Source: Octopus sinensis
Taxonomy: Eukaryota
Assembly (NCBI RefSeq): GCF_006345805.1
Contig: NC_042998.1
Coordinates: 193,440,001-193,504,000 of the forward strand
Direction of reading: 5' to 3'
Length of the DNA stretch: 64,000 nucleotides
The notes under the pieces are model-generated. The model made no database searches. It saw only the letters and a program-made list of their open reading frames with translations, and had not been told where the DNA came from. Shown here piece by piece: positions 843-58,389 of this stretch (its first letter is position 1; every line of letters begins with the position of its first letter). The translations under genes were made by a program, and so were the position numbers.

Positions 843-1058
843 TAAGGTGAGGAACTTACAGAATCGTAAGTATCCCGGGAAAAATACTTCGAGGCATTTC
901 GCCCGTTTTTATGTTCTGGGTTCAAATACCGCCGGGACTGACTTTGCCTTTCATCCTTTCTGGGTTGGTAAAATAAGTACCAGTTGAGCACTGGGGTCGG
1001 TGTAATCGACTTAGCCCCTCCCCTCAAAATTGCTAGCCTTGTGCCAAAATTTGAAACC
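843..1058 (+). mobile_element. OR1-like tRNA-derived SINE, short tail type (...cccctcccctcaaaattgctagccttgtgccaaaatttgaaacc)
   Basis: B-box-like ggttcaaatacc followed by the family core gactttgcctttcatcctttc...aagtaccagttgagcactggggtcg. Confidence 0.75.
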
Positions 1059-6154: not shown

Positions 6155-7420
6155 AATCGACAAAATTTGTCATCGTGTTATTATGAAGTACTAGTAGAAA
6201 AGGGGTTTAGTCCCCTACGACATTCATGCTGACATGGTTGCTACATTAGGGCATGATGCTCCAGATTTATCAACACTGCAAAACTGAACAACTAAATTTA
6301 GGAGGCGAAGGGAGAGTCTGGACGTTCAGCATCTGCCACCAACGAGGAAAACACTGATCGTGTTCAACACATCCTTAAATCCTTAAAAATGTTTAAGCCC
6401 GAATGCCGCGGCCATGCTGGGGCACCACTGCTGATGATGGATGATAGGCGAATGATTATAAATCAAATAGCCAATGATTTTAGCATATCCCGTGAAAGAG
6501 TCGAGAATATTTTGCACAACGTACTTGGTATAACGAAGGTTTCTGCTCAGTGGGGTTTCACATCTTTTGAGATCTGGTCAAAAGCGCACCAAGCTGATCG
6601 TATAGATTCTTTATTACTCACAAGGGGCTAAACATAGAAGAGACAAACAAGGACAGACAAACAGATTAAGTCGATTACATCGACACCAGTGCGTAACTAG
6701 TACTTAATTTATCGACTCCGAAAGGATTAAAGGCGAAGTTGACCTCGGCGGAATTTGAACTCAGAACGTATCAGCAGACGAAATAGGGCTATGCATTTTT
6801 CCCGGCGTGCTAACAGTTCTGCCAGCTCGTATCACGAGAAAATCTGACAGTTTTTGAGGCAGATCCAGCTAGTTTGCTTGAACGTTTCTGCACCCAATAT
6901 GAGTGAAGGGTTCATCACTTTGAGCCAAAGACCAACAGACAATCCACCGCACCTGCTCCAAAGGAGTGCAAGATCATTTCATATGGAGGAAAATTGATGA
7001 CCTCAGGTATTGGAATGCAAAAGGCATTGCATTCATTGATTATCTTCAAAAGGTCATACCATCGATGGAGAGTACTATACCAACTTCCTAAGTAGTTGAG
7101 AAAGGCTATCAAGACTAAACGCCCAGGAAAACTGACGAAAGGAATTTTCTTTCATCAGGACAATTCTCCAGCACACTAATCCTTGGTTTCAGAGGCTTTT
7201 GAGTATGACCGGATTTGAACTGGTTGATCACTCTCCCTATTTTCCTGATGTGGCCTCTTCTGACTATCATCTTCTCTCCACCATGAAAAAACACTTGGCT
7301 GGGAATCAGTATCTCAGTGATGATGACGCCATATCTGATGTTGCTTATTTTATGGACCAACAGGATTAAAGCTTCTTCACCGATGGAAGAAGCGTGTGGA
7401 CCGTAAGGGGAACTATCTTG
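6155..7420 (+). pseudogene. Mariner transposase pseudogene (stops, frameshifts, SINE insertion)
   Basis: Recognisable pieces: DDRRMIINQIANDFSISRERVENILHNVLGITKVSAQW (HTH up to WVP region), FHQDNSPAH, and HSPYFPDVASSDYHLLSTMKKHLAG (the YSPDLAPSD motif). Confidence 0.88.
6606..6829 (-). mobile_element. OR1-like SINE (long tail) inserted in the mariner
   Basis: Matches the other long-tail copies (e.g. 31768-32001) and interrupts the transposase just after ...VSAQW. Confidence 0.9.
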
Positions 7421-15270: not shown

Positions 15271-15855
15271 CTTTTTTCTGCTCTGGGCACAAAACCCGAA
15301 ATTTGAAGGGGAGGTAGCCAGCCGATTAGATCGGCCCCAATACGCAACGGGTACTTAATTTATCGACCCCGAAAGGATGAAAGACAAAGTCGACCTCGGT
15401 GGAATTTGAACTCAGAAAGTAGCGGCAGACGAAATACCTATTTCTTTACTGCCCACAAGGGGCTAAACACAGAGAGGACAAACAAGGACAGGCAAAGGGA
15501 TTAATGCGATTACATCGACCCCAGTGCGTAACTGGTACTTATTTAATCGATCCCGAAAGCATGAAAGGCAAAGTCGACCTCGGCGGAAATTGAACACAGA
15601 ACGTAACGGCAGACGAAATACCTATTTCCTTACTACCCACAAGGGGCTAAACACAGAGAGGACAAACAAAGACAGACAAACGGATTAAGTCGATTATATC
15701 TACCCCAGTGCGTAACTGGTACTTATTTAGTCGACCCCGAAAGGATGAAAGGCAAAGTCAACCTGGGCGGAATTTGAACTCAGAACGTAACGGCGGACGA
15801 AATACGGCTACGCATTTCGCCCGGCGTACTAACGTTCCTGCCAGTTCACCGCCTT
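15271..15855 (-). mobile_element. Trimeric OR1-like SINE array (one head, three bodies, two long tails plus one short tail)
   Basis: 16-bp TSD ctgcgtaatttaaatt (15255-15270) / ctgtgtaatttaaatt (15856-15871); both internal junctions read gaaata|ggtatttcgtc on the minus strand. Confidence 0.9.
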
Positions 15856-17149: not shown

Positions 17150-17228
<79 letters not shown>

Positions 17229-18454
17229 TGTTTCTTTATTAGCCACACGGGGCTGCACACAGACAGGACAGATTACAAAGTAGAGCTTTTCTTTTCGGTG
17301 AGAAAAAAAAGAAAAGATAAAGAAAAAGAAAAAAGAAAAAGTGGGTAGGTTTTCGATCAAATGGGATCGTAAAAAGATAGAAAAACAAACGATCAATAGG
17401 GATCTTGTATCACAGAAATATCATGATGTAAAGTGTAAAGGGGGAAGCAGATAAGCTTTATCCGTGGAAAGAAAAACCTACGGAAAAGACCACGGTAACC
17501 TCGGTCAATAATATCACATGTTAACACATTTATTTGCAAGTAAGTAACTCTTTGTTTTAAATTTTTCCGGATTCATAGGATTATGCTCAATGTGGCTTCG
17601 TCATTCATACGTGCCATCCTTGCTACATTCACCCATCTTTTTTTTAAACATTCGCTAAACAAAACTTGCCTCTCTACTCTCATTTTCCTTTTCAAGTAAT
17701 ACTTGAAGACGTTGATGGGAGATTGACCAGAGAGGAAAGTGTTTGTCTCCAATCCTTTCAGACGCGTCAACCAGATACATTCTTTCGCCATAGCCACAAG
17801 AATGATGAAAATAGCTCTTCCTTCCTGTTTGAAGGAGGGAGGCGTGACAATACTGATGATAGACTCGGCTGATAAACCGACTCGTCCCACACGTGACAGC
17901 AGTCGTTTGACATAAGCCTACAGGTCGGAAATTGTTGGACACTACACGAGTGCGTGCAGAACGACTTCGTCGCTCTGACCGTGTCTGTAGAGCTTATCCT
18001 GAACGGGTAACGCTTCTCGGTAGCACTGCCAGTCCAGGGATCTCTGGAAGTTGTCCATAGGTCCCGGCCCGAAAGTTGTCTTGAACTGGCGGATCAGATA
18101 TTCCTCGTCGACGCCCAGGTTCGCCACGAGATCGTCGTCGTACCTCCCCTCCACTAATCCCCTATAGAATGCGTTGTTGTGTTGAAATCGCTCAAGGTCG
18201 ACCCGGGACGGCATAGTTGCTTGAGAGCATTGTGACACTCGCGGTGCCATTCGCCCTTCCTCAGCCTCTTTTTGATCCACGACTGCAGTTCGGTCATGGT
18301 GACGAGCTGCGGGGAAGCGTGCCTCACAAACGGCGACCACATCTGTTCATTGTTGTCTACGTAGAGCCAGAGATGTCGCAGTTTCAGCCCGCATCATCAA
18401 CCACGGCATGCCCAGTCCTCCTTTTAACGGGTGTTGACAACAAGAGGATCATCT
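17229..18454 (-). mobile_element. 5'-truncated Tx1/L1-type LINE (ORF2 C-terminus + 3' UTR) embedded in (GATA)n
   Basis: Minus-strand peptides GMPWLMM..., AFYRGLVEG...RSLDWQCYREALPVQDKLYRHG, LHALV*CP (remnant of the C-terminal zinc-binding motif) and KRWVNVARMA; 3' UTR ends ...ctaataaagaaa; GATA tracts at 17151-17228 and 18455-18524. Confidence 0.8.
17573..18440 (-). pseudogene. LINE ORF2 C-terminal fragment (frameshifted, stops)
   Basis: ORFs 18154..18342, 17942..18340 and 17573..17890 join into one degraded reading frame. Confidence 0.75.
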
Positions 18455-18525
<71 letters not shown>

Positions 18526-21870: not shown

Positions 21871-24671
21871 CGTGTTGCTATCTTTTAACTGTAGGAAGGC
21901 ATAATTTAGCAAGACTGTGATCATTATCCAATCGGGGCCATCCGTCTTGTGTGAGGAAGCTAAGACTTCACTGGCCCAAATGTGTTTCCCCATTTCACAC
22001 GGCAGCATGTGATCTGAAACAATTTCGACTGTTATTTCCTTTAGGTCTATCGACCAAGCCGATGCTCTCCCATTGGTTGGGTTTTGTATTTTAGAGTAGT
22101 GTAGAATAACATTGACTGAATCAGCAGTCATCTCACACTAAACCTTCATACTATGGAGCAATTAAAAATGTGATTTAAGTTGAAAATACAAATATGAGCT
22201 GAAGGTATTTCTTTTTATATATTAAATATCTTTTGGTTTGCGGAAATTTCCGAAATTTACTGATAAATTGCCTTTAATGATAACATTATTGACAAAATGG
22301 TAATTTGTTTGGTTTTTTTTAATGATGGATTCTCAAATCAATCTAGTTAATTTTCCTTCAAATGGCAGTTTTCGCTCCAGTACGTCCAATCCTAGGATAA
22401 ATTATTTCAGAGAAATGAGCAGCAATCACATCATGCAATATGTGATAAATAATTTCTTAAGTATCACACGACAAATTTTATGATACGATTGCTACATGCT
22501 CAACATAGAAACAAACTATTCAGCATATTTTTAAAGTTCTTTCGGCTTCCTATTTAACATAACGTTGCTTTATAAGTCTTACTATGAGTGCAAGAATGGC
22601 TAAAGGGAAAACAGCTTCCCTTTGCAACTAATAGATCCCTGGTTCGATCGTAATGTGCGGCAACTTTGGCAGGTCTTTTTTACCGTAGCTTCGAGTCAAC
22701 TATAACCATCTGATTAAAATTTAATAGGTACAAACTTTGTAAAAGTCTGTCGGAGTGATTATAACAGATTTTCTTTTTGAGTGGTAAATTTAATATTTCG
22801 CCCGTTTAAACACCACCTAGCCTAAGGGCAATATCAGTGGGGTTATTCTTTTTATAAGCAATCGGACTAGTTCCCTTCATTCTACAGTCTCAGAGTCCCT
22901 GATGAAGGTCTGAGGCGCTGATCATCCACTTCTTGCAGTGCCAATTAAAAACTACTGTGAAAAGCTTGCAAGTCGAAGTGACGTCAATCTTATTGTTCTT
23001 CTTTGTAGTATTCTTTTACCTCAGAAATCCCAAGACAAGATCTATAATAATAAATCTATTAAGAAGTTAACACTGCAACAGATTTCATTAAGAAAAAGTA
23101 CAGGAAAATTCAAAACGTTAGTAAGAACAGTTTGTGATTACAAAAAAAAAAAATGTTATTTTGAAGCCAAACGGGTGGGCAACATCAATTGTAGTTTTAC
23201 CTGTAAAATGAATAAAATCGACTATTTTACATCACATATAACTAAAAAAAATCTGTAAAATCAAAGTATACCCATTGAAGGTTTGACTTGAACATCGTAG
23301 ATAGTAACAGAATGCAGATCGCACAACTGCTACGACTGCCATACCCACAAATAAGAATCACTTAAACCGACGAAAAAGAAACGCCGTTACCATTGCATCT
23401 TCTCATTCAACTGAGAATGATGACGAGACATCGATTCAAGGCAGCAGTTATGCCTCAGCAACTGCATTCCCACAGGCTGCGCTGATTAACGAAAATGTTC
23501 GACATCAGAACGAAGTAAATGCAATGATTAATGCAGATGTACAAGCTGCAGACAAAAATAATCGGCGTAGACTTGGTCTTCACCGAAAAGCTACAACTAC
23601 ATGATCTGCAAGAGCTGCTGAGAACGATGCTCAGCCTGAGCTAATCTAAGCAAGTGTTTCGAGTTCAGCGTGAACTTCATCAAAGTAATGAACAAAGCAT
23701 AAACGTTACTCCTACTTTTGTTGCCAGAGATACCAAACAGAAGACCGCAGCTCCAATGATCGAGAATATTAATCATGTACAAAATACCTTTATGCACTGT
23801 ATTACAAGGACACTGATTTAGCGTTGGTCATTCAAGGAAGTTTCACATATGTTTTAGAAAGGATAAGTATACTTATAATTTATTAGTATTAGTGCATTCA
23901 CGCAGCGAACATTACTCCTCTGCATTAGATCAGCTGATCCGTCGTTCGCTCAAAACCAATGACATCACAAAAAAGTGTCTCCGACCCTTTAGTATTGGAA
24001 TTCTTGAAAAGTAAAAATTTTGTATTATGTAGCTTGTTATTCTCTTTAAGTGATTATTTTCTGATTAAAATACACCAAAAAATGGTGACACTGCAGTAAA
24101 AGACAAATCGTAAAATATAGGGATTTTCATAGAAAAAAAGCACCTTTTTGATGTAAATAATTTTTGGTCTTAACATGGTCCAATTTGAATTTTATCTTCT
24201 ATGGAATGAAGAGCAAGCCTTCTTCTATCATACTCTCAGTTTTGGTCAACTTGCACCGCAGTGTCTCGAAGGTGATAGTGTTAGTTGAAGGCTACCAAAC
24301 CTGCCACACACACACACACAGACAACTTCAGCTTTATATATATAGATGTCGTATAAAAACGTTTTTAATATTTTGTTCAACTTTATTCAATTTGTCGTCG
24401 AACACAATATACAAAGCCTTTCCAAGCAAATGTGAAAATAGCATTTCTTCCATTGCGAAGCAGAATGACAACAATTCTAAGCTGCCAAAATTTTGCCTTT
24501 GTGGGGAAAAGAAATATGTTTTGGGGTATATTCTGGGAACTCTTTCGTTGACGGCACAAAAAGAAACATCAACAACAACAGAAACAATGCTAACGCGCTC
24601 ACACCAGGAAATATTGGTTTCAAATTTTGTCAGAAGTCCAGAAATTTCGGAGACGTGTTTAAGTCAATTAC

Positions 24672-24829
24672 ATTGACCCCAATGTTTAACAGGTACTTAT
24701 TTTATCTAACTCGAAGGGTGAAAGGCAACGTCATTCTTGGCAGAATTTGAACACAGAACGTAAAGACGGACGAAATACTGCTAAGCATTTTGTCCGATGT
24801 GCTAACGATTCTGCCAGCTGTCCGCCTTC
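24672..24829 (-). mobile_element. OR1-like SINE, partial
   Basis: Head aaggcggacagctggcagaatcgttagc and core match the family. Confidence 0.7.
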
Positions 24830-24991: not shown

Positions 24992-25201
24992 AAGTCAGTG
25001 AGCTGGCAGAATCGTTAGCATGCGGGGCAAAATGTTTAGCAACATCTCACCGTCATTACATTCTCAGTTCAAATTCTGCTGAGGTCGACTCTGCCTTTCA
25101 TACTTTCGGGGTCGATAAATTAAGTACCAGTTGAACACTAGGGTAGATGTAATCGATTTAACTCCTCCCCCGAAATTGTTGGCTTTGTGTTAAAACTTGA
25201 A
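24992..25201 (+). mobile_element. OR1-like SINE, short tail
   Basis: gagctggcagaatcgttagc...gttcaaattc...gtcgataaattaagtaccag...ctcctcccccgaaatt. Confidence 0.8.
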
Positions 25202-31767: not shown

Positions 31768-32001
31768 TATTTCTTTACTACCCACAAGGGGCTAAATGCA
31801 GAGGGGACAAACAAGGACAGACAAATGGATTAAGTCGATCACATCGACCCCAGTGCGTAACTGGTACTTAATTTATCGACCCCGAAAGGATGAAAGGCAA
31901 AGTTGACCTCGGCGGAATTTGAACTCAGAACGTAGCGGCCGACGAAATACCGCTGAGCATTTCGCCCGGCGTGCTAACGTTTCTGCCAGCTCGCCGCCTT
32001 A
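31768..32001 (-). mobile_element. OR1-like SINE, long tail, with TSD
   Basis: caataattatatttcttt at 31759-31776 and 32003-32020. Confidence 0.92.
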
Positions 32002-32124
32002 CCAATAATTATATTTCTTTAATAGACAATAGACCTCTCTTTCCATCTATATTATAATTCTTCTTGCTCGTTCGTTCGCACGTTACGCTTTAGTTTGTTA
32101 GAGAGAGGGCCGGGAGTGAGTGAA

Positions 32125-33425: not shown

Positions 33426-33894
33426 TATTTCTTTATTGCCCACAAGGGGCTAAACATAGAGAGGACAAACAAGGACAGACAAAGGGATTAAGTCGATTAC
33501 ATCGACCCCAGTGCGAAACTGGTACTTTTATTTATCGACCCCGAAAGGATGAAAGGCAAAGTCGACCTCGGCGGAATTTGAACTCAGAACGTAACGACAG
33601 ACGAAATACCGCTAAGCATTCCGCCCGGCGCGCTAACGATTCTGCCAGCTCGTAATACCTATTTCTTTATTGCCCACAAGGGGCTAAACACAGAGGGGAC
33701 AAACAAGGACAGACAAACGGATTAAGTCGATTATATCGACCCCACCCAGTGCGTAACTGGTACTTAATTTATCGACCCCGAAAGGATGAAAGGCAAAGTC
33801 GACCTCGGCGGAATTTGAACTCAGAACGTAACGACAGACGAAATACCGCTAAGCATTCCGCCCGGCGCGCTAACGTGTCTGCCAGCTCGCCGCC
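33426..33894 (-). mobile_element. Head-to-tail dimer of OR1-like SINE
   Basis: TSD ttaccgaaatatt at 33413-33425 and 33895-33907; linker aggtatt at 33654-33660. Confidence 0.9.
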
Positions 33895-34105
33895 TTACCG
33901 AAATATTATTTAAGTCTGAGGGAAGAAACGGCAAGACAGCAGAACAAAAAAATATGAAATGTTTAGAAATAATTAGTGATTCGAGTATATAACTTTCCTT
34001 TGAGTTTTGTTTAAATTCTTCACGAAATTCAAGTTGGTTTCTAACAAGGCTTTATTGTTTGAGTCAAGACATTTATGACGATTTCCTATTGAATTAGTGC
34101 GTACA

Positions 34106-35654: not shown

Positions 35655-36070
35655 TACTCTTTACTCTTTACTCTTTTACTTGTTTCAGTCATTTGACTGC
35701 GGCCATGCTGGAGCACCGCCTTTAGTCGAGCAAATCGACCCCAGGACTTATTCTTTGTAAGCCCAGTACTTATTCTATCGGTCTCTTTTGCCGAACCGCT
35801 AGGGTGACGGGGACGTAAACACCAGCATCGGTTGTCAAGCAATGCTTGGGGGACAAACAGGACACACAAACACACACATACATATATATATACATATACA
35901 TATATACGACAGGCTTCTTTCAGTTTCCGTCTACCAAATCCACTCACAAGGCATTGGTCGGCCCGGGGCTATAGCAGAAGACACTTGCCCAAGATGCCAC
36001 ACAGAGGGACTCAACCCGGAACCATGTGGTTGGTTAGCAAGCTACTTACCACACAGCCACTCCTGCGCCT
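35655..36070 (-). mobile_element. OR2-like (CORE-type) SINE, full length
   Basis: Head aggcgcaggagtggctgtgtgg, cttgggcaagt core, internal (AT)n(GT)n, tail ...gactgaaacaagtaaaagagtaaagagta. Confidence 0.9.
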
Positions 36071-37631
36071 ATATGCTGCTTTAAATTTTGCCTCTAGCTG
36101 GATTTGAGCTGTTTGTAAGTTTCGCTTATTTCTGTTTGTTCGTAAACGTGTTCATGTAATGACAGTGGTACAATCCCTGTGTTATTGCTATAATTTTCTT
36201 TTAGACGTGGGTCATATTTCGAGGAATTTCTCAGAATCTACTGGGCTGCTGATACTGTTATTTACTATGCACGTTTCATGGTAAATTTTGCTAAATGCAA
36301 CAGACTATTTTTTCTCAACAAATGTAACTTGTCGCAATTACTTATGAGAACTACCAACGAGAGAGAAACACATAGGTAGAATAATTACCCTTAATCACGA
36401 GCGCTATGTTAGAAGCTTTGCTATCGTAAACAATTATAAGAATGTAGCACAAGTTTGTGTTAAATCCACAAACTGCAGGTTGTATCACGAACGACCGTAT
36501 AATGAAGATTGTATATATCCCTACTCTGAACGATCTAGAATCATTTGGAGTGGATGCATCTGGCTTTTATCCGGTAAATACTATCGATTAATATGGGTTG
36601 TTGAGATATTTTACAACCCTCCCGGTGGCATTTCGTTCCCTTCACATAGCCAATCGTGAGATCTTCTGTAAACTTTTTTTAATAATAGATTCAGACCTTG
36701 TTCAATTCAAAACTCCATTCGAATTTCTCTTCATAGTTTTTTGACCTGCAATGGCTAAACTCACTTTACTGTATAGTTATGATGCATATTATCACGTTTA
36801 ACTTATCAGTTTTATTTCGATGATTGATTATTGCTACGATCTTCTTTAAACAGGTATTTCTTTGTCTTTTTGCACAGAAGATAACCAGTTCTTTCTTACG
36901 TTAATAAGATTGTCTACACATCAACATTTTTTATAGGATTGGATTAACTATAAGACAGAATAGTTTTCTAATCATACACGGTTGAATTCGACGCGTGTAT
37001 TATGTATGCTTGTTTGTGTATGAATACACGTATGTGCGCATGTACATAATTATAAACGGATAGCACGTACACACACCAGCGTATGCTAACATATGAATAA
37101 AGGCATAACATCGTATATGCATGACAAAATGTGCTCAACACATTCAGAGAAAATATATTCGATTTATATGTCTCTGTAAAGTAAAAATTCTGCGAAGAAA
37201 TATGTAAATATATAACCGAAAACAAATGCAAATGCCAAAAAAATAACAGACGCGGTACTTATGGATTTATGCACATTTATACATAAGTAAACACAAACAT
37301 GAACTCAAATGATATACAGTTTAGGAAAATATGAACTAAAGTAAATAATAGTAAAATAGATATACGCCGGTAGAGATATTGTGACATCTATGCATATATT
37401 TATGTATTCATGAAAAGCGGATGAAAATATTCGTGCAGATATACGTAATATGCACCGTAAAGTATTATGCGATACATTTCATTTTCTTGTAAAGGTACAT
37501 ACACAAATATATATATATATATTTGTGTGTATGTATATATATATATATATCTTCGTTACTATAGGGACAGTCCGGATATTTATTGATCAGACCACGAACA
37601 TGAATAAAGCTGGTTAAAAATAGAGTGCATT

Positions 37632-38029
37632 ATTCCTTTACCTATTTCAGTTATTTGATTGCGGCCATACGGAAGCACCGCCTTTAGTCGAGCAAATCGA
37701 CCCCAGGACTTATTCTTTATAACCCTGGTACTTATTCCATTACTCTGTTTTGCCGAACCGGTAAGTTACGGGGATGTAAACACAACATCGGTTGTTAAGT
37801 AATGGTAGAGGGACAAACACAGACACTCAAAAGACACACACATATACATGTGTATATATATATATATACGACGGGCTTCTTTCAGTTTCCGTCTACCAAA
37901 TCCACCCTCGAGGCTTTGGTCGACACGAGGCTATAGCAGAAGATACTTGCCCAAGGTGCCACGCATTCGGACTGAACCCGGAACCATGTGGTTCGGAAGT
38001 AAGCTTCTTACCACACAGCCACTCCTGCG
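37632..38029 (-). mobile_element. OR2-like SINE
   Basis: Homologous to 35655-36070. Confidence 0.88.
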
Positions 38030-39316
38030 TTGTTATATTTGTAGGTATAAATTTATTGGTGATATTTTTGATTCTCGAAAAAAATATTTATGGTTGGCAA
38101 TAGTTTATTTTTTTCTGAACGTCTCTTGAAGTTAAATGTCACTGCAAAGATATTGTCATAGATCTTTGCTGTTATACTGTTTTGTCATTTGTATAGATAA
38201 GGTAACATTGCTTCCGGTATTCAAAAGAAATGCGTTTAATGGTTAGAACGGAATATAAAAAGATCGAAAGTTATGTCATTTTACTATTCACAATTTTATA
38301 AATTTTTGTTCAGTTTCTCGTGTCAACATTACATTGGAAAACTGTCTTTGAATAAACGCATATAAATATGAAGGCAAGTATTTAAGTTGGTAGAATTATA
38401 ATTGTTTAATCCTATTTTTATTAAAGATACGATGGTTCTTATTTTGCGAGGTACAGATTTCTTTGGTAATGTAAATAATTTGGCTAAAGCAGTATATACA
38501 ACTATATTGGGCGGAGAATTATATGAACTGATATTTTTTTCTAATTTCATGTACAGAAATTATAGAATTTTTTCTCTTCTTTTTTCTCTTCTCTTCTTTT
38601 TTTTTTGTTATAAACTACAGATGAGCATATTATCAAAAATGAACCTACACGCATCCAGATGTATCTAAATAATGCATTAATTACCAACCTCCAGCCTGTT
38701 GTTAATTTGGTGCCCTAGTCTGTGTATGAGTATAGTTTCCTTAATTCTTAAATTACCCAAATTTCTTTAATTGGCCTCAATTGTGACTGCTATGCTTTTG
38801 TCGGTATTCTGTCTAGATGATTTCTGAAGGAGGAAGCTCTCGTGCGTGTGTGTGTGTGTGTGAGTGAGTGTGTTTGTGTGTATGTTTGCATCCCGTTCAG
38901 TCTCGTGTAATTTCATATCAAAAAGGGGGGGCGAGTACCAACACTTCAATATGGCTGTTTGAACAATTGTGAAGTGTTCCCACATGAAACCATTGGTTGC
39001 CTTTCTAACCAACTGAAGAAAATAACTGAAGTCAGTAAATCACTGAGAAGTAGCCTTCATAAGCTTCAACATATAATGTTTTACTATCTTGTGACTCAAA
39101 ATTTCGTACTAGATCATACTGAAAAGAATGCGAAATAAATAAGATCTAATAAAACATCAATACGATGATAACTCAATCTATCCATAACAGTCCAGTCCCT
39201 CTTTCTCAAGCATATACTTCCATATTTTATTCCACCTTTTTTATTCCAACTTTCTACCACATACATTATTTTGACTGCAGCGTTTTAATTTTGAACTCTC
39301 TTGGAAACTAGAGAAA

Positions 39317-39716
39317 TACTCTTTTACTTGTTTCAGTCATTTGACTGCGGCCATGCTGGAGCACCGCCTTTAATCGAGCAACTCGACCCCGGGACTTATT
39401 CTCTTTGTAAGCCCAGTACTTATTCTATCGGTCTCTTTTGCCGAACCGCTAAGTAACGGGGACATAAACACACCAGCATCGGTTGTCAATCAATGCTAGG
39501 GGGACAAACACATACACACAAACACACACACGCATATATGTATACATATATACGACGGGCTTCTTTCAGTTTCCGTCTACCAAATCCACTCACAAGGCTT
39601 TGGTCGGCCCGAGGTTATAGTAGAAGACACTTGCCCAAGGGGCCACGCAGTGGGACTGAACCCGGAACCATGTGGTTGGTAAACAAGCTACTTACCACAC
39701 AGCCACTCCTGCGCCT
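39317..39716 (-). mobile_element. OR2-like SINE
   Basis: Homologous to 35655-36070. Confidence 0.9.
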
Positions 39717-40260
39717 ATATAATATTCAGATATATTATTGTTGTAGCAATTATTTCCACTATCATTATGCGAAGCTTATTATCACTTTTGATGTGAAATT
39801 ATATAATTGTGTCATTGAAAACTTTGACATCTCATGAAATAAATTCAAAGTTCATTTAACAGCATCCTGTGTCAATAAATTCCACGGTGTAGTTGTCATT
39901 ATCATCACAACCATATTTATTTTGTTTTCTGCCGCCATGTTCTTTCTTCTCAAAAAAATATTTTATGTGTCACCTACGTTCACATTTCTCTCTATCTTTC
40001 CCTCACTCTCTCTCTCTCCTCTCTCTCTCTCTCATTTCTTTCTCTCCCCCTCTCTTTTCCCTATCTCCCCCATTCTATTCTTCCTATCTATTTTTCTATC
40101 TTTTCGTTGTCATTTTCCCCTGTAACTCCACTTCAAGAATTCTTTTTTAATAAAATATCTAACGAGCTTATCTGCGCATTGATTTGACCATCTGGCACGA
40201 AATAAATATACTGCAGTTTGAAACGGAACTTGCAATACACACACACACACACACACACAC

Positions 40261-42365: not shown

Positions 42366-42425
<60 letters not shown>

Positions 42426-42433
42426 ATATACAT

Positions 42434-42790
42434 GCGCAGGAGTGGCTGTGTGGTAAGAAGCTTGCTTACCAAACACAGTTCTCAGTTCAGTCCCACTGTC
42501 TGGCACCTTGGGCAAGTGTCTTCTAGTATAACCTCTGGTCGATCAAAGCCTTGTGAGTGGATTTGGTTGACAGAAACTGAAAGAAGCCTGTCATGCTTTG
42601 TCCCCCATCACCACCATCACTTAACAACTGATGTTGGTGTGTTTACGTCCCCATAACTTAGCGGTTTGACAAAAGAGACTGATAGAATAACTACTAAGCT
42701 TACAAAGAATAAGTCCTGTGGTCAATTTGTCTGACTAAAAAGCGGTGCTCCAGCATGGCCGCAGTCAAATGACTGAAACAAATAAAAGAA
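42434..42790 (+). mobile_element. OR2-like SINE
   Basis: Head, core and tail present. Confidence 0.85.
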
Positions 42791-42799
42791 TATATATAT

Positions 42800-43206
42800 A
42801 GGCGCAGGAGTGGCTTTGTGGTAAGTAGCTTGCTAACCAGCCACATGGTTCCGGGTTCAGTCCCACTGTGTGGCATCTTGGGCAAGTGTCTTCTGCTATA
42901 GCCCCGGGTCGACCTTGTGAGTGAATTTGATAGACGGAAACTGAAAGAAGCCTGTCGTATATATATATATATATATGTGTGTATGTGTGTGTCTGTTTGT
43001 GTGTCTGTGTTTGTCCCTCTAGCTTGACAACCGATGCTGGTGTGTTTACGTCCCCGTCACCTAGCGGTTCGGCAAAAAGAGACCGATAGAATAAGTACTG
43101 GGCTTACAAAGAATAAGTCCTGGGGTCGATTTGCTCGACTGAAGACGGTGCTCCAGCATGGCCGCAGTCAAAATGACTGAAACAAGTAAAATAGAGTAAA
43201 AGAGTA
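42800..43206 (+). mobile_element. OR2-like SINE
   Basis: Full length, directly after the previous copy. Confidence 0.9.
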
Positions 43207-43404
43207 TACATATATATATATATTCTTATACCTATGAATCTGTAAATATTCAATTATTATTCAATGATATTCTTACTATTTTTGCCGTGGTCGAATGTTG
43301 ATCTTTGAGGCTGGAATAAAGGTTTGTTGGTGGGTTTGTTTCGTTGTTATTTTCGTATAAATGTCAACTTGTTTACAGATGTATTTTGCTGGAACCAGTA
43401 AATG

Positions 43405-43578
43405 GCACAACGTTCTGAGTTCAAATTCCACCGAGGTCGACTTTGCCTTTCATCCTTTCGGGGTCTATTAAATAAGTACCAGTTACGCTCTGGGGATCGA
43501 TATAATCGACTTAATCTCTTTGTCTGCCCTTGTTTGTTCCCTCTGTGTGTAGCCCATTGTGGGCAGTAAAGAAATAAG
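43405..43578 (+). mobile_element. 5'-truncated OR1-like SINE, long tail
   Basis: gttctgagttcaaattcc...gcccattgtgggcagtaaagaaata. Confidence 0.85.
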
Positions 43579-43580
43579 AA

Positions 43581-44959
43581 AGGACTGTTGTTTATAGAAC
43601 TTACGCCACAGTAGCAAGGAAAATTGAAGTAGTGTCGGAGGCACATGTGGAAAAGGCACTGAGGTCAGTCTGGCAGGAGATATCTTACCTTGCCAGAGGA
43701 CGAAAATATGGAACGATGGAGGTGCAGTTTAAAGAGATAGCAACTGCTAAACTGTACTCGGCCACACCGTTGAAAACGGATGAGGTGGTATTGCTACCTG
43801 TGTATCTTGGGAGACGGACCACCAGGGTTCGGGTGGAGGACATACCACCGGAAGTAAATGTAGCCTGGTTGGTGGCTGCCGTGCTGCTGGGCATGGAGGA
43901 GAAGGTGGTGATCCTGCAGGGCACTAGAACTCCCTAAAGGGATTGGAGTTGATAAACCCTGGAAATGATGGTACAGGTCGCGGAGGAGGACCTAGAAAAG
44001 ATGGTAGAAAACATCTTAGAGTGCAGGTGTTACGTGCGGTATTATGTGAGGTGTTATGAGCGGTGTTATGTAGCCTGAAGGACCACATTAGAACGGAATG
44101 CCTCCACTATTGGAAAAGGCTGAGGAGGGTGAAAGAGGGATAAATGCTCCACAGCCCATGGATGAAGAATTAAGTAACGGGGAACCACAGAAGACAGGCA
44201 CCAGTGTCGAGAAGGAGGAAGAATCAAATACCAGTTGGGAAATGGTGGAGAAAATGAGCAGGAAGAGGAGGAAAAAGATACACATGGTAAAAAATGACCC
44301 CCGACCACACCCACACGGCCCTCACCTACACCCACTCTTCCCCAACCACTCCCTACAGACACAAACCCGCCCCATGCCCAGACTGACAAAAAGCAATTGC
44401 AAACACACAGGAGCCTCAAAGCTACCCACCCCCACCCTGTAATGAAAAATTCGTATTAATGTACAATGGACAGATTGAAGAATTGGATAACGAAGTAAAT
44501 CGTGGGACGGAATAGTCAAGGTGGATATAGCAGGTGTAAAAGGTTAGCCCGAGAACGATTATTGCGTGCGAACGGACCAAGAGAACCTGTTGAAGGTACA
44601 TGAGTACATGGAAAACTATGACTGCGGGTGGTGGTACAAAAAAATAGACACCAGCACAATGCCGGAAAGAATAAGGTAGGTGGACATTTTAAAGAAATAT
44701 AATATAGGCATTTTGAAAAAAGATGGGGCTTCAATTATTGTAAAATATAAATAAGTGTATTCCAAAGTTAGTTACAAATGGAAATTCAAATGGCGTTGCA
44801 AAGGCTTCAATGAAGTCGCCCGGGGATGCGGCCGAGCGACTTCATTTCATCTTTCATTGTATAATTTCATTTCATTTCATTCGTTTTTATGGGGGGGGGA
44901 TTGTCCCCATCTTGTGCTGTCCCCTCTAGTGAGGTCTTTATGGCCAATTTCATGAAATA
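43581..44959 (+). mobile_element. Degenerate ORF1-only non-LTR element (E2), 5' part missing
   Basis: RTVVYRTY...RGRKYGT...PLKTDEVVLLPVYLGRRTTRV aligns by eye with the ORF at 53471; knuckle remnant C-SLKD-H-IRTE-C near 44065-44100; no EN/RT; 3' hairpin 44810-44845; ends ctttatggccaatttcatgaaata. Confidence 0.75.
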
Positions 44960-45284
44960 AAGATGTTTGCTTCCCATCCACGTGGTTCCGGGTTCAGTCC
45001 CACTGTGTGGTACATGGGGCAAGCGTCTTCTACTATAGCCCCGGGCAGAGCAAAACCTTGTGAGTGGATTTGGTAGACGAAACTGAAAGAAGCCCTACCA
45101 CCATCGCTTGACAACCGATGTTGAGGTGTTTACGTACCCGTAACTTAGCGGTTCAATAAAAGAGGCTGATAGAATAAATACTGGGCTTACAAAGAATAAG
45201 TCCTTGGGTCGATGTGCTCGCCTAAAGGCGGTGCTCCAGCATGGTCCCAGTCAAGTGACTGAAACAAGTAGAAGAATAAAAGAA
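44960..45284 (+). mobile_element. OR2-like SINE lacking its head up to the E2 junction
   Basis: aagatgtttgcttcccatccacgtggttccgggttcagtcccact continues into the full body and tail. Confidence 0.85.
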
Positions 45285-47509: not shown

Positions 47510-47730
47510 ATTTCTTTACTACCCACAAGGGGCTAACACAGAAGAGACAAACAAGAACAGACAGAGGGATTAAGTATTATATCGACCCCAGAGCGTAACT
47601 AATACTTATTTAATCGACCCCGAAAGGATGAACGGTAAAGTCGGCCTCGGCGGAATTTGTACTCAGAACATAGCGGCGGACGAAATACCGCTACGCATTT
47701 TTCCTGTCGTGCTAACGGTTCTGCGGCTCG
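47510..47730 (-). mobile_element. OR1-like SINE, long tail
   Basis: Homologous to 31768-32001. Confidence 0.85.
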
Positions 47731-49859
47731 CAGTTATATGTAAGATCTTTTAAGTTCAGTTGAGGCCCAAATACCAACTTAATAATGATGAAGCTAGTTT
47801 TATTCTTAAGTGTTTTTAAGATTAATTGAAGCAACCACTGTATTTCATTAGAAATGCGTTGTTGAAAGGGTTAATTTCTAAACGATTCTATATTCCTACG
47901 TCAACAAATGTTCACTTCTTTGCATTTACTTCATGATACGGCAACAACTAATATAACAAAGTTATATGAACGCTATTCTTTGCTAATAAATATGCTCAGA
48001 AACATGTGTAGTGTTGTCTCCCTTGTATGCCGAAAAAATGAACGAATGGTATTAGTTGATATTAGTCATCAGTTGTGTAGTCATTTCTTGCATACTTAGA
48101 TCCTTTTAAGTATTGTAGCAGAATTTATAATAAGTAAAACAAAACCAGTCACTTACCAATGAGTACTCTGCAGAACGATGGTTGGTCTTAATTTCATTAA
48201 AAGATGTGTCTCCTATGAATATGATTGTCTTGTTGAATATCTATTGATCCCTTTCATCGCTCTACCAATGCAACACGGGTTATAAATTTGCAAAATATAT
48301 GGGTTCATATCCGTTTGGATTTATTCTCGCTGAAACATGGTTTAGATCGTTTCATCTTTTAGTCAGAGGAAGAAGAGTTTTTAGAATCTCCGAGAAGTGG
48401 CGAAGCTATTCTACGACCAGATACCAAGGTTGACTGCTTGGAGAAAACCCGTCTATGCTAAAACACAACAGGAAAGGATAAGATTATGGTATTAAAATAT
48501 TAAAACGTCTATTCCATCTAAGAAAAATGTTCCTCCGATGGGGTTACACAGTTTCGGTTCCCCAGGGTTTGAGAAGATCAAACCAATGAGTTAAGCATCA
48601 TATGAGTCGATATAATGGGACCATTGTTATCTTACAGCACTAATAATACATAGCTTGCATTTAGGCCCCATGACCTACCCCGGTCCCTTAGGTTATATTA
48701 CTTCTGTTGTTGTTCAGATCTCGGTGAGACATCAACCTATGATGAAAAAGGTTACGGCCTTGACTATTTCATCATATTTTTATACAAACACCGCTGTACG
48801 TAGAAATATATTGTCTATTTTTTTAAGACAGTATGTTGTAATTTCGGAACGATATAGTTACTACTCTAGTAGGTCGAGTGACCTCATAAACGTTCCATTT
48901 GTTGATTTGTTATTAAACTCAAAGAAGAGTGCTGCTAGAGTTTCCTTGATTTTCTATACTGAATTGTCTCTAAATTCCGTCAGTTATTTTATATTTTTTC
49001 TTGCAAAAGTTAACATATATTTCGTCTACGTAATTGTAATGCATTGTTAGAAACTTCATCTTGAAGCTAATTTTGCTTACCTGAACTATTATGTGTGAAA
49101 AACAAAGAGAGAGACAATATTTTACATAAGCCTATCTTAAATAATTTCATATAGTTAGTTTCTGGTTTATTTTTTAAGTACATAAATGTCTCTGAATTGT
49201 TTAAATATTGTGCTAATGTTAGAAATATCGTTGATACATTTACTTTGATATATGTTTTAAAATCTGCATTATTTCCAAGGCCCGTGTTGATTCGGCAGTC
49301 GCTAAAAGATTAATGGCTGGAAGTCTGCAATAAAGAAGGGTGAGAAACAGAAGCGTCAAAAGAATGGTTACATCATATAGCAATGTATAGTTTGAAACTT
49401 TAATCATAAGTCTTTGATATGATAATATTTTCAAGAAGTAAACTTTCTTGATGCCCTGAACCAGAACAAAGTAACAGGTAAATAGCCGGGTTTTTTTTTC
49501 TAGTTTTCGCTTTCGTATATCAAAATGTCGCTTTTAACAAATAATGGTCTGTATTTATAACATCTTTAAGAACCGTTATGTTGTTCATTCTTTCATCAAC
49601 AACTCAGAATTTCAATCTACACACAAATACATACATACACAAACACATATACAAATGCTCCTGCACGCACACACGAACACACGCGTAGTTGCACACATCA
49701 CACCTTACTATATAATCAACGATGCCACAACACACAACCATTTTTTACATTCACGTGACGCACTCTAGGGTTATAATCAATGCTAAGACATACGCAGACA
49801 TACACTTGTAAACATACACACACGCATACACATATACACACGCACATATACACACACGC

Positions 49860-53470: not shown

Positions 53471-54211
53471 ATGGCAATGAAAAATGACAAAATTTTGGAA
53501 TGGGAGATCATACCGCCTAAAAAGTGGTTAAAAGACCGTGAAGATAGGACGGTGGTGTTGAGAACCTACTCCAAGGCACTCGACACTATCGCCCTATTCG
53601 AAAAGACGGCAATTGAGGAGGAGTTGGCAGAGTATTTGCCAACAATTAAATTCATTTCCAGGGGTGTCAAATATGCAACGGTGTGGTTGCTATTTGACAC
53701 CCCTGAAGAGGCTTGCAAATTTGCTAGCAAACCCCTGGAGGGTAAGGAAATTTTATTCCTGCCCACGTACCAAAAAAAGAGACTGACGAAAGCTTGGATT
53801 TGCGGGCTGCCACTCGGGATAGAACCCGAGTGGATAGAGGAGACTATCCGCCGGGGTCTGGGTAGCAGCGAAACTAAGCTCCTTAATGTAAAAGTTCTTC
53901 CTGCGGCTGCTTGGTTTGGGTCAAAAGCAATTTTGACCCTTTGGACCCAATCAGCCAATCTGGTTCTTCCAGATTTTTTGATAATGGCCGGGTGCAGGTA
54001 CCCGGTGATGCTTGAGGGTCGCCCCCCTAAGTGTCATCGGTGCTTGGAGTCCGGCCATATAAAGAAGAACTGTCCCCGGGAACAAAATAGGATTCCGGAA
54101 CAGTTAAGTGAAACCCCTGTAGAAGAAGGAAGCCGAGGAAGCAGAGGACTCCTCAAACAGAGGCCGAAAGAGGAAGGTGAGCAACAATGGGTGCTCACCA
54201 AAGGATACTAG
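53471..54211 (+). CDS. LINE ORF1-like nucleic-acid-binding protein, N-terminal part (RRM-like region + CCHC zinc knuckle)
   Basis: 246-aa open frame with CHRCLESGHIKKNC (CX2CX4HX4C) preceded by YPVMLEGRPPK, typical of L1/Tx1-type ORF1p. Confidence 0.8.
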   Translation: MAMKNDKILEWEIIPPKKWLKDREDRTVVLRTYSKALDTIALFEKTAIEEELAEYLPTIKFISRGVKYATVWLLFDTPEEACKFASKPLEGKEILFLPTYQKKRLTKAWICGLPLGIEPEWIEETIRRGLGSSETKLLNVKVLPAAAWFGSKAILTLWTQSANLVLPDFLIMAGCRYPVMLEGRPPKCHRCLESGHIKKNCPREQNRIPEQLSETPVEEGSRGSRGLLKQRPKEEGEQQWVLTKGY

Positions 54212-54740: not shown

Positions 54741-55228
54741 GGGGCCCCGACCTAGAGCTGGCGCATTCCTAAGGGAAGTATAAGCCAGGTCTGGGAGGAG
54801 GGGCTTTGTGTATTGTATTTATATATGCAATTATTGAACTATGTTGTTATTAGTAATGGACTGCTAAGTCCAAAAATTGAAAAAATTGTAAGAGGTTTAA
54901 TACCTCGTTTTGTGTTTGTTTTTAAAAGAACAATGTTTTAGAGAAGCAGAAGTCGGCGGGCGCTTTTTGTCTTCTCCCATCCCCATCATCTTTCTTTCAT
55001 TATCATTCACTTCATTAATGTCCTCGTCCAGTTCGCAAAGCTAACTTACTCTACGTCCTGCCTTTATGGCAAATGTTATGAAATAAAGTAGCTTGCTAAC
55101 CAACCACATGGTTCCGGGTTCAGTCCCACTGCGTGGCATCTTGGGCAAGTGTCTACTGCTATAGCCCCGGGCTGTCCAATGCCTTGTGAGTGGATTTGGT
55201 AGACGGAAACTGAAAGAAGCCTGTCGTA

Positions 55229-55320
<92 letters not shown>

Positions 55321-55887
55321 TCCCCCTAGCATTGCTTGACAACCGATGCTGGTGTGTTTACGTCCCCGTCACTTAGCGGTTCGGCAAAAGAGACCGATAG
55401 AATAATTACTGGGCTTACAAAGAATAAGTCCCGGGGTCGATTTTCTCGACTAAAGGTGGTGCTCCAGCATGGCCGCAGTCAAATGACTGAAACAAGTAAA
55501 AGAGTAAAAGAGTATCCATCGAAGGTGCAAGAAGCATTTCTTTGGTCCTGTATTTTGCATTTTGATTGTAATTGTATTTTGTCTGTTACTATATCTATCG
55601 CTTAAGTTTTGACTTCAAATTGCTGCAAATAGCAGTATCCATCCTCACACTGAGTGAAACAACTGTATGATCTAACGGAGGACTTATTTAAAACAATCAT
55701 CAGGAGAAATGCATCTTGTACACTTCAAGGGCGATAGTGATTACACAATATGTTAATATATATTCTCACCAATGTACTACGAATGTAGATATGTGCTGAA
55801 ACAACTGTAGTGATTTTAAAAGAAGAATGTCAATCCATTCATTTTCTATTATCTATTTATATAAACTTTACAGATACTATTGAATTC

Positions 55888-56466
<579 letters not shown>

Positions 56467-57977: not shown

Positions 57978-58389
57978 CAGCAGGAGTGGCTGTGTGGTAA
58001 GTAGCTTGCCTATCAACCACATGGTTCTGGGTTCAGTCCCACTGCGTGGCATCTTGGGCAAGTGTCTTCTGCTATAGCCTCGGGCCGACCAATGCCTTGT
58101 GAGTGGATTTAGTAGACGGAAACTGAAAGAAGCCCGTCGTATATATGTATATATATATATATATGTGTGTGCGTGTTTGTGTGTCTGTGTCTGTCCCCCT
58201 AGCATTGCTTGACAACCGATGCTGGTGTGTTTATGTCCCCGTAACTTAGCGGTTCGGCAAAAAGAGACCGAGAGAATAAGTACTGGGCTTACAAAGAATA
58301 AGTCCCGGGGTCGATTTGCACGACTAAAGGCGGTGCTCCAGCATGGCCGCAGTCAAATGACTGAAACAAGTAAAAGAGTAAAAGAGTAT
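57978..58389 (+). mobile_element. OR2-like SINE, full length (uninterrupted reference for the E1/E2 site)
   Basis: gtggt-aagtagcttgcctatcaaccacatgg is intact. Confidence 0.9.

What the first reader, a model, noticed from the sequence alone, without database searches (positions are those of the whole stretch)
17231..17270. LINE 3' terminus matches the tail of the OR1-like SINE: candidate partner LINE in the same window
Seen: the last 40 nt of the Tx1/L1-type LINE (tgtcctgtctgtgtgcagccccgtgtggctaataaagaaa) match the long SINE tail at 33428-33467 at 33/40 positions without gaps. Established: stringent-type SINEs borrow the 3' end of the LINE that mobilises them. Inference: this LINE lineage drives the long-tail SINE subfamily; whether the pair is already described is unknown to me.
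Basis: partly seen in the sequence, partly recalled or inferred. Interest (0 to 1): 0.7.

Follow-up and report, generated by a model that had tools for sequence, protein, structure and literature searches.

The report
Octopus SINE and LINE share tail
A dead fragment of an L1-type jumping gene (LINE) in this octopus-like sequence ends in the same ~45-base tail as the abundant short repeats (SINEs) around it, and related LINEs and SINEs in Octopus sinensis and Argonauta share that tail, so this LINE group is the likely engine that copies those SINEs: a classic kind of partnership that I did not find described for octopus.

Summary
The last 40 nt of the minus-strand LINE fragment (window 17270→17231) match the SINE tail (33467→33428) at 33/40 without gaps, both at the element's 3' terminus. 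The best hit in 30 shuffled windows was 25/40.

The 40 nt are the LINE's own end, not a stray SINE piece. Five further LINE copies (O. sinensis, two Argonauta loci, one Logan contig) carry the same tail after ORF2 and the 3'UTR. It is the only 3'UTR block conserved between subfamilies.

Full-length Argonauta relatives have ORF1, an APE endonuclease, RT and zf-RVT, and best match human LINE-1 ORF2p. That places the group in the L1 superfamily. Tx1 versus L1 proper was not resolved.

Eight long-tail SINE copies in the window and two SINE families in Argonauta carry the tail.

The window LINE itself is dead: 5'-truncated, two stops, a frameshift and a lost CPRC motif. It fits the SINE tail no better than sister subfamilies (38/48 versus 39/48).

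This is a new member of a known kind (a stringent-type SINE/LINE pair). It has some extra value because L1-clade pairs are rare.

The parts
17231..17270 (-). Terminal 40 nt of the LINE (the finding): ...tctgtgtgc-AGCC-ccgtgt-GGCT-aataaagaaa. Contains a predicted small GC hairpin and an AATAAA motif.
17231..18455 (-). 5'-truncated, degenerate L1-superfamily LINE fragment of about 1.2 kb: ORF2 C-terminus plus 3'UTR plus tail.
17573..18457 (-). Remnant of the ORF2 C-terminal region (zf-RVT region). It is 69% identical to P0001 over 213 aa and 42% to Argonauta L004 ORF2 aa 284-582. It has two in-frame stops, at least one frameshift, and a 12-codon deletion that removes the CPRC zinc ligands.
17231..17572 (-). 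LINE 3'UTR (342 nt). It aligns with same-subfamily copies L001 and L002 internally. Against the other subfamilies only the last 13-17 nt align significantly.
17151..17226 (-). (TCTA)n microsatellite directly 3' of the LINE end, after the four bases 'cata'.
18457..18524 (-). (TCTA)n microsatellite directly 5' of the truncated LINE. The same repeat lies on both flanks, so the LINE probably sits inside one former array.
33428..33467 (-).
33428..33652 (-). Long-tail SINE copy, downstream unit of a tandem dimer.
33662..33899 (-). Long-tail SINE copy, upstream unit of the dimer. The dimer as a whole is flanked by the duplication atatttcggtaa.
31770..32010 (-). Long-tail SINE copy with target-site duplication tataattattg. 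The target also carries aaagaaa next to the duplication.
6607..6829 (-). Long-tail SINE copy.
15441..15622 (-). Long-tail SINE copy, 5'-truncated unit of a tandem array.
15625..15855 (-). Long-tail SINE copy, first unit of the tandem array.
43410..43574 (+). Long-tail SINE copy, 5'-truncated.
47511..47731 (-). Long-tail SINE copy with target-site duplication ttacatataact.

Best explanation
Window 18455→17231 (minus strand) is an old, 5'-truncated, inactivated copy of an octopod L1-superfamily LINE. Full-length relatives encode ORF1, an APE endonuclease, a reverse transcriptase and a zf-RVT domain.

LINEs of this group end in a conserved tail of about 45 nt: ...TCT-R-TGT..-[GC-rich 3-4 bp hairpin with a CYTGT-type loop]-AATAAAGAAAT. 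The abundant tRNA-type 'long-tail' SINE in the window carries a copy of that tail as its 3' module. At least two SINE families in Argonauta do the same.

The most likely mechanism is the classical stringent-type partnership, and the following steps are inferred:
- The Pol III SINE transcript presents the LINE-like 3' tail.
- The LINE ORF2 protein recognises that tail, probably the hairpin.
- ORF2p nicks the target and starts target-primed reverse transcription at the terminal GAAAT(A/CTAT), helped by A-rich microhomology with the target.
- The result is a SINE copy flanked by 11-12-bp duplications.

Shown here: the tail homology, that the tail is native to the LINE, that it is the only conserved 3'UTR block, and that it is shared by several SINE families in two genera. 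Inferred: recognition of the tail by ORF2p, and the mobilisation itself.

The window copy is a relative of the driver, not the driver.
For: 1. Tail identity of 33/40 ungapped and 38/48 gapped, in register at both 3' termini, far above the shuffle maximum of 25/40.

2. The tail follows ORF2 and the 3'UTR in six LINE copies of different subfamilies and two genera: the window copy, L002, L003 (O. sinensis), L004, L013a and L013b (Argonauta). L003 is a clean 5'-truncated insertion ending at the tail, with the duplication ATTGGAT.

3. Between subfamilies, whose ORF2 C-termini are 42-65% identical, the only significant 3'UTR similarity is the terminal 13-33 nt.

4. Full-length relatives L004 and L013 have ORF1, Exo_endo_phos, RVT_1 and zf-RVT. 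They best match human LINE-1 ORF2p co-linearly (E 8e-13 and 5e-22), while R2 matches are weaker.

5. Eight window SINE copies carry the tail. In the Argonauta loci, more than 12 copies of a CORE-type SINE and of a short 150-bp tRNA-type SINE carry it.

6. Features are shared within each host. Argonauta SINEs and LINE L013b share CGGCCCTTGTGGCTAATA...GAAATCTAT. The octopus SINE and the window LINE share AGCCCC.

7. A common hairpin fold is predicted for SINE and LINE tails. It is 85% paired across 28 tails, against 41-52% when the partner columns are slid. There is one GC↔CG swap between octopus SINEs and the other tails.

8. SINE copies have 11-12-bp target-site duplications typical of APE-type LINE integration.
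Against: - No experiment was done. Tail sharing shows common origin, not current mobilisation.
- SINE-LINE tail identity is only about 80%. None of the six sampled LINE tails is near-identical to the octopus SINE tail, so the actual source subfamily was not sampled or has since diverged.
- Hairpin covariation rests on essentially one evolutionary event, and in the window LINE the pairing register shifts by one base.
- The window subfamily (window copy and L002) is followed by (TCTA)n, which octopus SINE copies lack. Its insertion behaviour may therefore differ from the SINE's.
- I could not scan a complete octopus LINE library, so a non-L1 LINE with a better-fitting tail cannot be excluded.
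Confidence: 0.75

Rival explanations
1. A sister subfamily is the true partner. A different L1-like subfamily, for example the L003/L013b type that ends ...GGCCCTTGTGGCTAATAAAGAAAT without a microsatellite, mobilises the SINE. The window LINE is a microsatellite-associated side branch that merely inherited the common tail.
For: - L003 and L004 match the SINE tail as well as or slightly better than the window LINE: 39/48 and 39/50 against 38/48. They share CCCTTGTGG and TTGTCCCCTCT with the SINE.
- L003, L004, L013a and L013b, like the SINEs, are not followed by (TCTA)n.
- The window copy and its nearest relative L002 both abut (TCTA)n.
Against: - The window LINE alone shares the 5' hairpin arm AGCCCC with the octopus SINE.
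- The difference in match is one position, and only six LINE tails were sampled.
- This refines the main explanation rather than contradicting it, since the clade and mechanism are the same.
Confidence: 0.45
2. The 40 nt are not LINE sequence. Either a short 5'-truncated SINE fragment landed at the end of the LINE, or the LINE captured its tail from the SINE.
For: SINE copies greatly outnumber LINE copies (8 to 1 for this tail in the window), so chance juxtaposition is conceivable for any single locus.
Against: - The same tail sits at the same place, directly continuing the LINE's own 3'UTR, in six LINE copies of several subfamilies in Octopus and Argonauta.
- L001 and L002 align with the window 3'UTR right up to the tail.
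- The similarity never extends into SINE body sequence.
- An ancient capture of a SINE tail by the ancestor of the whole LINE clade cannot be formally excluded. It would still leave a functional shared tail.
Confidence: 0.04
3. The similarity is non-functional shared ancestry or convergence on generic signals (AATAAA plus a GC hairpin). The SINEs are mobilised by another LINE, or through a relaxed mechanism.
For: - Part of the conserved block is a generic poly(A)-signal-like AATAAA.
- Hairpin covariation is weak.
- Octopus genomes hold very active RTE, CR1 and Dong-R4 LINEs (PMC13282606).
Against: - Identity extends over about 45 nt, beyond AATAAA, and is in register at the termini.
- The tail is the only conserved part of otherwise unalignable LINE 3'UTRs, which argues for constraint.
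- Several unrelated SINE heads in Argonauta carry the same tail.
- The SINEs have no poly(A) or other simple tail that a relaxed mechanism would use.
Confidence: 0.1

Closest known systems
Eel UnaL2 LINE / UnaSINE1 (stringent-type pair; Kajikawa & Okada 2002, from my own knowledge; principle summarised in PMC3747384)
   Same: The SINE's 3' end is copied from the LINE's 3' end. A short conserved tail with a small stem-loop sits near the terminus. The end is a short repeat or oligonucleotide rather than poly(A). The tail is the presumed recognition site for the LINE reverse transcriptase.
   Different: UnaL2 belongs to the L2 clade and has one ORF; the LINE here has L1-superfamily architecture (ORF1, APE-RT-zf-RVT). 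In UnaL2 the role of the tail was shown experimentally; here it is inferred.
Maize/sorghum L1-clade LINEs with ZmSINE2/ZmSINE3, and Chlamydomonas L1-1_CR/SINEX-3_CR (Ohshima 2012/2013; PMC3472496, PMC3747384)
   Same: These are L1-clade LINEs that keep a conserved 3' end with a hairpin and share it with SINEs, meaning stringent recognition inside the L1 clade. The survey found this to be rare: 3 SINEs with L1 tails among 58 pairs, despite more than 800 L1-clade LINEs.
   Different: Those cases are in plants and green algae and end in poly(A). Here the host is an animal (octopod), there is no poly(A), the sequences are unrelated, and several SINE families use the tail.
CORE-SINEs such as MIR/L2, MIR3/L3 and Mar-1/RTE-3_MD (Table 1 of PMC3747384; octopus OR1 or OR2 is listed as a CORE-SINE in PMC4824008 and PMC4758252)
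   Same: Modular SINEs: a tRNA-type head, a conserved central domain and an exchangeable LINE-derived tail. The window also holds a second subfamily with the same head and body but a different tail ('tail B').
   Different: The tail here comes from an L1-superfamily LINE rather than L2, L3 or RTE. Whether the window SINE is OR1 or OR2 itself was not tested.
Tx1-group site-specific LINEs, including the microsatellite-specific Kibi (TC)n and Koshi (TTC)n (Kojima & Fujiwara 2004, from my own knowledge; the Tx group is described as target-specific in PMC3747384)
   Same: L1-superfamily architecture. The window copy has the same (TCTA)n microsatellite on both flanks, and its nearest relative L002 also abuts (TCTA)n.
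   Different: Membership of the Tx1 clade was not tested by phylogeny. Only two copies show the microsatellite association, and other subfamilies (L003, L004, L013) lie in ordinary sequence.

Membership tests
Stringent-type SINE/LINE pair (shared 3' tail) | The SINE 3' end is homologous to the LINE 3' end, in register at the termini and above chance. | tested here: met
   33/40 ungapped and 38/48 gapped; shuffle maximum 25/40.
Stringent-type SINE/LINE pair (shared 3' tail) | The tail is an integral part of the LINE, contiguous with ORF2 and the 3'UTR in independent copies. | tested here: met
   Six LINE copies in Octopus and Argonauta; L003 has a target-site duplication right after the tail.
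Stringent-type SINE/LINE pair (shared 3' tail) | The LINE 3' tail is conserved among subfamilies while the rest of the 3'UTR diverges. | tested here: met
   Only the terminal 13-33 nt align between subfamilies.
Stringent-type SINE/LINE pair (shared 3' tail) | A conserved stem-loop in the tail, supported by compensatory changes. | tested here: inconclusive
   A common fold is predicted. It is 85% paired against 41-52% in slid controls, but there is only one lineage-level GC↔CG swap and one single-copy UA pair.
Stringent-type SINE/LINE pair (shared 3' tail) | The LINE protein mobilises RNA carrying the tail in trans, and the tail is required. | not testable with these tools
   This needs a retrotransposition assay.
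L1 superfamily (L1/Tx1) non-LTR retrotransposon | ORF2 with an N-terminal APE-type endonuclease, a central RT and a C-terminal Cys-rich (zf-RVT/CCHC) domain, with an ORF1 upstream. | tested here: met
   In full-length relatives L004 and L013: PF03372, PF00078 and PF13966, plus an upstream ORF1 with a weak CCHC match. The window copy keeps only the C-terminal region and has lost the CPRC motif.
L1 superfamily (L1/Tx1) non-LTR retrotransposon | Closest solved relative is LINE-1 ORF2p, matched co-linearly over EN and RT. | tested here: met
   E 8e-13 (EN to tower) and 5e-22 (RT) to human ORF2p; R2 proteins match more weakly.
Tx1 clade | The RT domain groups with Tx1 references in a phylogeny. | not tested
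   No named Tx1 reference sequences were obtainable; database hits were unnamed. Indirect support only: RepeatMasker-based octopus annotations list L1-Tx1 among LINE classes (PMC13282606, PMC8967140).
Tx1 clade | Target-specific insertion. | tested here: inconclusive
   (TCTA)n lies on both flanks of the window copy and 3' of L002. Such arrays cover about 1.1% of the window. L003, L004 and L013 are not in microsatellites of that type.
OR1 / CORE-SINE of octopus | A tRNA-derived head with Pol III A and B boxes. | tested here: inconclusive
   ARAGORN and Rfam find no tRNA in the copies. A B-box-like GAGTTCAAATTCC is visible in the sequence.
OR1 / CORE-SINE of octopus | Sequence identity to the published OR1 consensus or CORE domain. 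| not tested
   No OR1 or CORE reference sequence was available. The literature disagrees on whether OR1 or OR2 is the CORE-SINE.

The most novel reading that the evidence does not exclude
Octopods harbour an animal L1/Tx1-superfamily LINE clade that uses stringent, hairpin-based recognition of a non-poly(A) 3' tail. That clade is the engine behind the octopus-specific SINE expansion: several SINE families with different heads have plugged into the same tail. One sublineage additionally homes to (TCTA)n microsatellites through its terminal TCTA repeat. This would be an animal counterpart to the plant cases and would support the proposal that stringent recognition is ancestral in the L1 clade.
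Probability: 0.35. Interest if true: 0.65.

Novelty: new member of a known kind. Interest (0 to 1): 0.5.

Why it matters
SINEs are the largest repeat class in Octopus genomes: about 40% of repeat content according to PMC8967140 and 11.6% of the O. vulgaris genome according to PMC13282606. They have been linked to genome rearrangement and neural expression. Yet the latest curated annotation still lists 893 of 900 recently active SINE families as 'unclassified', and none of the papers I could search names their LINE partner.

Naming an L1-superfamily LINE clade as the tail donor gives a concrete, testable driver for those expansions. It also adds an animal example to the very short list of L1-clade LINEs with stringent-type tails: 3 of 58 pairs, all in plants or algae, in Ohshima's survey. 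That bears on whether stringent recognition is the ancestral state of L1.

Tried and rejected
- **ORF fragments against Pfam.** Scanning the window's own ORF fragments gave nothing. The LINE nature only emerged by homology to P0001 and its relatives.
- **Protein-pattern scan of metagenome contigs.** A related-loci scan with the ORF2 C-terminal alignment found no relatives.
- **DNA scan of metagenome contigs.** A scan with the tail pattern hit one prokaryotic coding contig (L016), which is a chance match. That collection evidently holds no octopod DNA.
- **Contigs that stop short.** L001, L005, L007-L012 and L015 end before the LINE terminus or are too diverged, so they gave no usable tail. L006 has only a degenerate tail-like end. 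L014, a family about 43% identical, shows no recognisable tail.
- **Naming the clade from database names.** This failed because the hits were unnamed or 'hypothetical', so Tx1 versus L1 stays open.
- **Literature.** Searches for OR1/OR2, for an octopus LINE partner, and for tRNA-Core with L1-Tx1 found no description of the pair. The SINEBase supplement and the Albertin 2015 paper were not held.
- **Other L1-like sequence in the window.** A tblastn search found no other ORF2 remnant, only two ORF1-like fragments.
- **Tail B.** The tail of the second SINE subfamily has no LINE counterpart in any sequence I held.
- **Stray SINE fragment.** Rejected, because the tail recurs at the end of six LINE copies.

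Full report
**1. The observation**

On the minus strand the window reads ...ctctactttgtaatctgtcctgtctgtgtgcagccccgtgtggctaataaagaaa, ending at 17231, followed by 'cata' and a (TCTA)n array. The SINE copy at 33428-33652 ends ...ttgtttgtcctctctatgtttagccccttgtgggcaataaagaaa at 33428.

The two terminal 40-mers agree at 33/40 positions without gaps. Thirty shuffles of the window, scanned on both strands, never gave more than 25/40. In the real window the LINE 40-mer finds four SINE ends at 33/40, two at 31 and one at 30.

The motif GCCCCNTGTGGNNAATAAAGAAA with up to 3 mismatches occurs nine times, against zero in 100 shuffles. Eight hits are SINE 3' ends and one is the LINE end. With gaps the homology extends to about 48 nt (38/48).

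**2. What the 'LINE' is**

The stretch 18455→17231 is about 1.2 kb and is bounded on both sides by (TCTA)n. Its ORF fragments have no Pfam hit of their own.

The conceptual translation is 69% identical to P0001, a 294-aa protein with a zf-RVT domain (PF13966). It is 42% identical to residues 284-582 of the ORF2 of a near-full-length element in Argonauta hians (L004).

The window copy is dead:
- It lacks everything upstream of the last roughly 300 codons of ORF2.
- It has two in-frame stops and at least one frameshift.
- It has a 12-codon deletion that removes the CPRC zinc ligands.

Relatives were found in Octopus sinensis and Argonauta hians assemblies. I therefore infer that the window is octopod, probably an Octopus species.

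The full-length Argonauta elements L004 and L013 encode three parts:
- an ORF1 with a weak CCHC match;
- an APE-type endonuclease (PF03372);
- RVT_1 followed by zf-RVT.

Their best solved relatives are human LINE-1 ORF2p, matched co-linearly over the endonuclease-to-tower region (E 8e-13) and the RT (E 5e-22). R2 proteins match more weakly. This is L1-superfamily architecture.

Whether the group is Tx1 or L1 proper could not be tested, because no named reference sequences were available. Published octopus annotations list L1-Tx1 among LINE classes, so Tx1 is plausible.

**3. Is the tail the LINE's own?**

Yes. Five further LINE copies end in the homologous tail after their own 3'UTR:
- L002, the nearest subfamily...tctgtgctgagcactgcgtgaataataaaaaagaa, followed by (TCTA)n.
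- L003, O. sinensis...ctctatgtttgggcccttgtggctaataaagaaat.
- L004, Argonauta...ctctatgtttttgcccttgtggctaataaaagaaat.
- L013a, Argonauta...ttctgtgtcagccaggtggctaagaaagaaat.
- L013b, a 5'-truncated 3'UTR fragment...ttctgtgtcggcccttgtggctaataaagaaatctat.

L003 is a clean 5'-truncated insertion whose body ends at the tail, flanked by the duplication ATTGGAT. L001 and L002 align with the window 3'UTR internally. Between subfamilies the only significant 3'UTR similarity is the last 13-33 nt, always at the very end of both sequences.

The tail is therefore a conserved module of this LINE clade, not a stray SINE fragment.

**4. The SINE side**

The window holds eight long-tail copies. Three units have clear 11-12-bp target-site duplications. 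These are tataattattg, ttacatataact, and atatttcggtaa around the dimer at 33428-33899. The target is A-rich next to each duplication. None has a poly(A) tail or a (TCTA)n tail.

A second subfamily has the same head and body but a different 3' module, 'tail B'. This shows the modular build typical of CORE-type SINEs.

In the two Argonauta loci, more than a dozen SINE copies end in ...tgttcggcccttgtggctaatagagaaatctat. They belong to two different families: a CORE-type element of about 230 bp and a short tRNA-type element of about 150 bp.

Partners resemble each other within each host. Argonauta SINEs and LINE L013b share CGGCCCTTGTGGCTAATA and the ...GAAATCTAT end. The octopus SINE and the window LINE share AGCCCC.

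**5. Which LINE fits best?**

Over the last roughly 48 nt, the octopus SINE tail matches the LINE tails as follows:

| LINE tail | Matches / aligned columns |
|---|---|
| Window LINE | 38/48 |
| L003 | 39/48 |
| L004 | 39/50 |
| L013b | 35/49 |
| L002 | 32/48 |
| L013a | 31/51 |

Equally, the window copy is not singled out. At about 80% identity, the actual source subfamily has probably not been sampled.

**6. Mechanism**

RNA folding predicts the same imperfect hairpin for SINE and LINE tails. It has an outer UCU/AGA stem, a middle UGU(U)/(A)AUA stem, and an inner GC stem (GCCC/GGGC, GGCC/GGCU or AGCC/GGCU) with a CUUGU-type loop.

Across 28 tails, 85% of cells are paired, against 41-52% when the partner columns are slid. 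There is one GC↔CG swap, between octopus SINEs and the other tails, and one single-copy UA pair. This is compatible with a recognition hairpin of the kind known from stringent LINEs. It rests on very few events, so I treat it as suggestive only.

The proposed mechanism is inferred from the established model (Ohshima et al. 1996; Kajikawa & Okada 2002; summarised in PMC3747384). The SINE RNA mimics the LINE 3' end. ORF2p binds the tail and primes reverse transcription at the terminal GAAAT, with microhomology to an A-rich target.

**7. The microsatellite**

The window copy has (TCTA)n on both flanks, and L002 has it at its 3' end. Such arrays cover about 1.1% of the window, so the association is unlikely to be chance.

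Argonauta elements end in ...GAAATCTAT, which is one and a half TCTA units. Either this subfamily grows or uses a TCTA-repeat tail and homes to matching arrays, or it is site-specific like the Tx1-group elements Kibi and Koshi. Two copies are too few to decide.

**8. Comparison with what is known, and novelty**

SINE/LINE tail sharing is textbook. What is less common is an L1-clade donor. [quoted passage not shown]

No octopus pair appears in that review ('octopus' occurs 0 times). I found none in the octopus repeat papers I could search. The 2026 O. vulgaris annotation still lists 893 of 900 recently active SINE families as unclassified. Repbase, Dfam and SINEBase could not be consulted, so prior description there cannot be excluded.

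I rate this a new member of a known kind, with moderate interest.

**9. Verdict**

The window copy is a dead relative rather than the driver. Tx1 assignment, OR1 identity and actual mobilisation remain untested.

Noticed in passing
window 17151-17226 and 18457-18524; L002 1321-1342: The LINE fragment sits between two (TCTA)n arrays, and its nearest relative L002 also runs straight into (TCTA)n. Argonauta LINE and SINE ends read ...GAAATCTAT. This may reflect a TCTA-repeat tail, or homing of one subfamily to that microsatellite.
   Followed up: partly
window 910-1058(+), 24616-24828(-), 25000-25200(+), 15320-15438(-): A second SINE subfamily has the same head and central domain but a different 3' module ('tail B': ...cgacttagcccctcccctcaaaattgctagccttgtgccaaaatttgaaacc). 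The swap point is right after CGACTTA. No LINE with this tail was found in the window or in the fetched loci.
   Followed up: partly
window 35662-36066(-), 37630-38038(-), 39317-39721(-), 42423-43209(+), 44975-45283(+), 55086-55515(+), 56093-56277(-), 57970-58389(+): An unrelated SINE-like family of about 410 bp. It has a tRNA-like head (...ggttctgggttcagtcccactgcgtggc...), an internal TA/TG microsatellite and its own tail (...gtcaaatgactgaaacaagtaaaagagta). It is at least as abundant in the window as the long-tail SINE.
   Followed up: no
window 33428-33899 and 15320-15855: SINEs occur as head-to-tail arrays. One is a dimer flanked by a single duplication pair (atatttcggtaa). The other is a three-unit array in which the tail end GAAATA joins internal SINE position ~56 (ggtatttcgtc) at both junctions, with a tail-B-like last unit. 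This suggests tandem duplication or template switching rather than separate insertions.
   Followed up: no
window 43569-44015(+) and 53504-54097(+): Two L1-like ORF1 fragments with no ORF2 remnant after them. The first is 29.5% identical to L004 ORF1 aa 200-346 (E 6e-12) and starts right after a SINE end. The second resembles the L014 ORF1, and the overlapping ORF 53471-54211 has a weak zf-CCHC match.
   Followed up: partly
L004 2830-3355: In Argonauta, three tandem copies of a short SINE of about 150 bp with the shared tail lie just upstream of the near-full-length LINE. They are preceded by another tail-like end followed by (ATT)n, and the LINE's own 3' flank also starts with (ATT)n.
   Followed up: no
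P0005: One homologue of the LINE ORF2 C-terminus is deposited at NCBI as a protein of a Herbaspirillum sp. MAG. This is almost certainly host (cephalopod) contamination of a metagenome bin.
   Followed up: no
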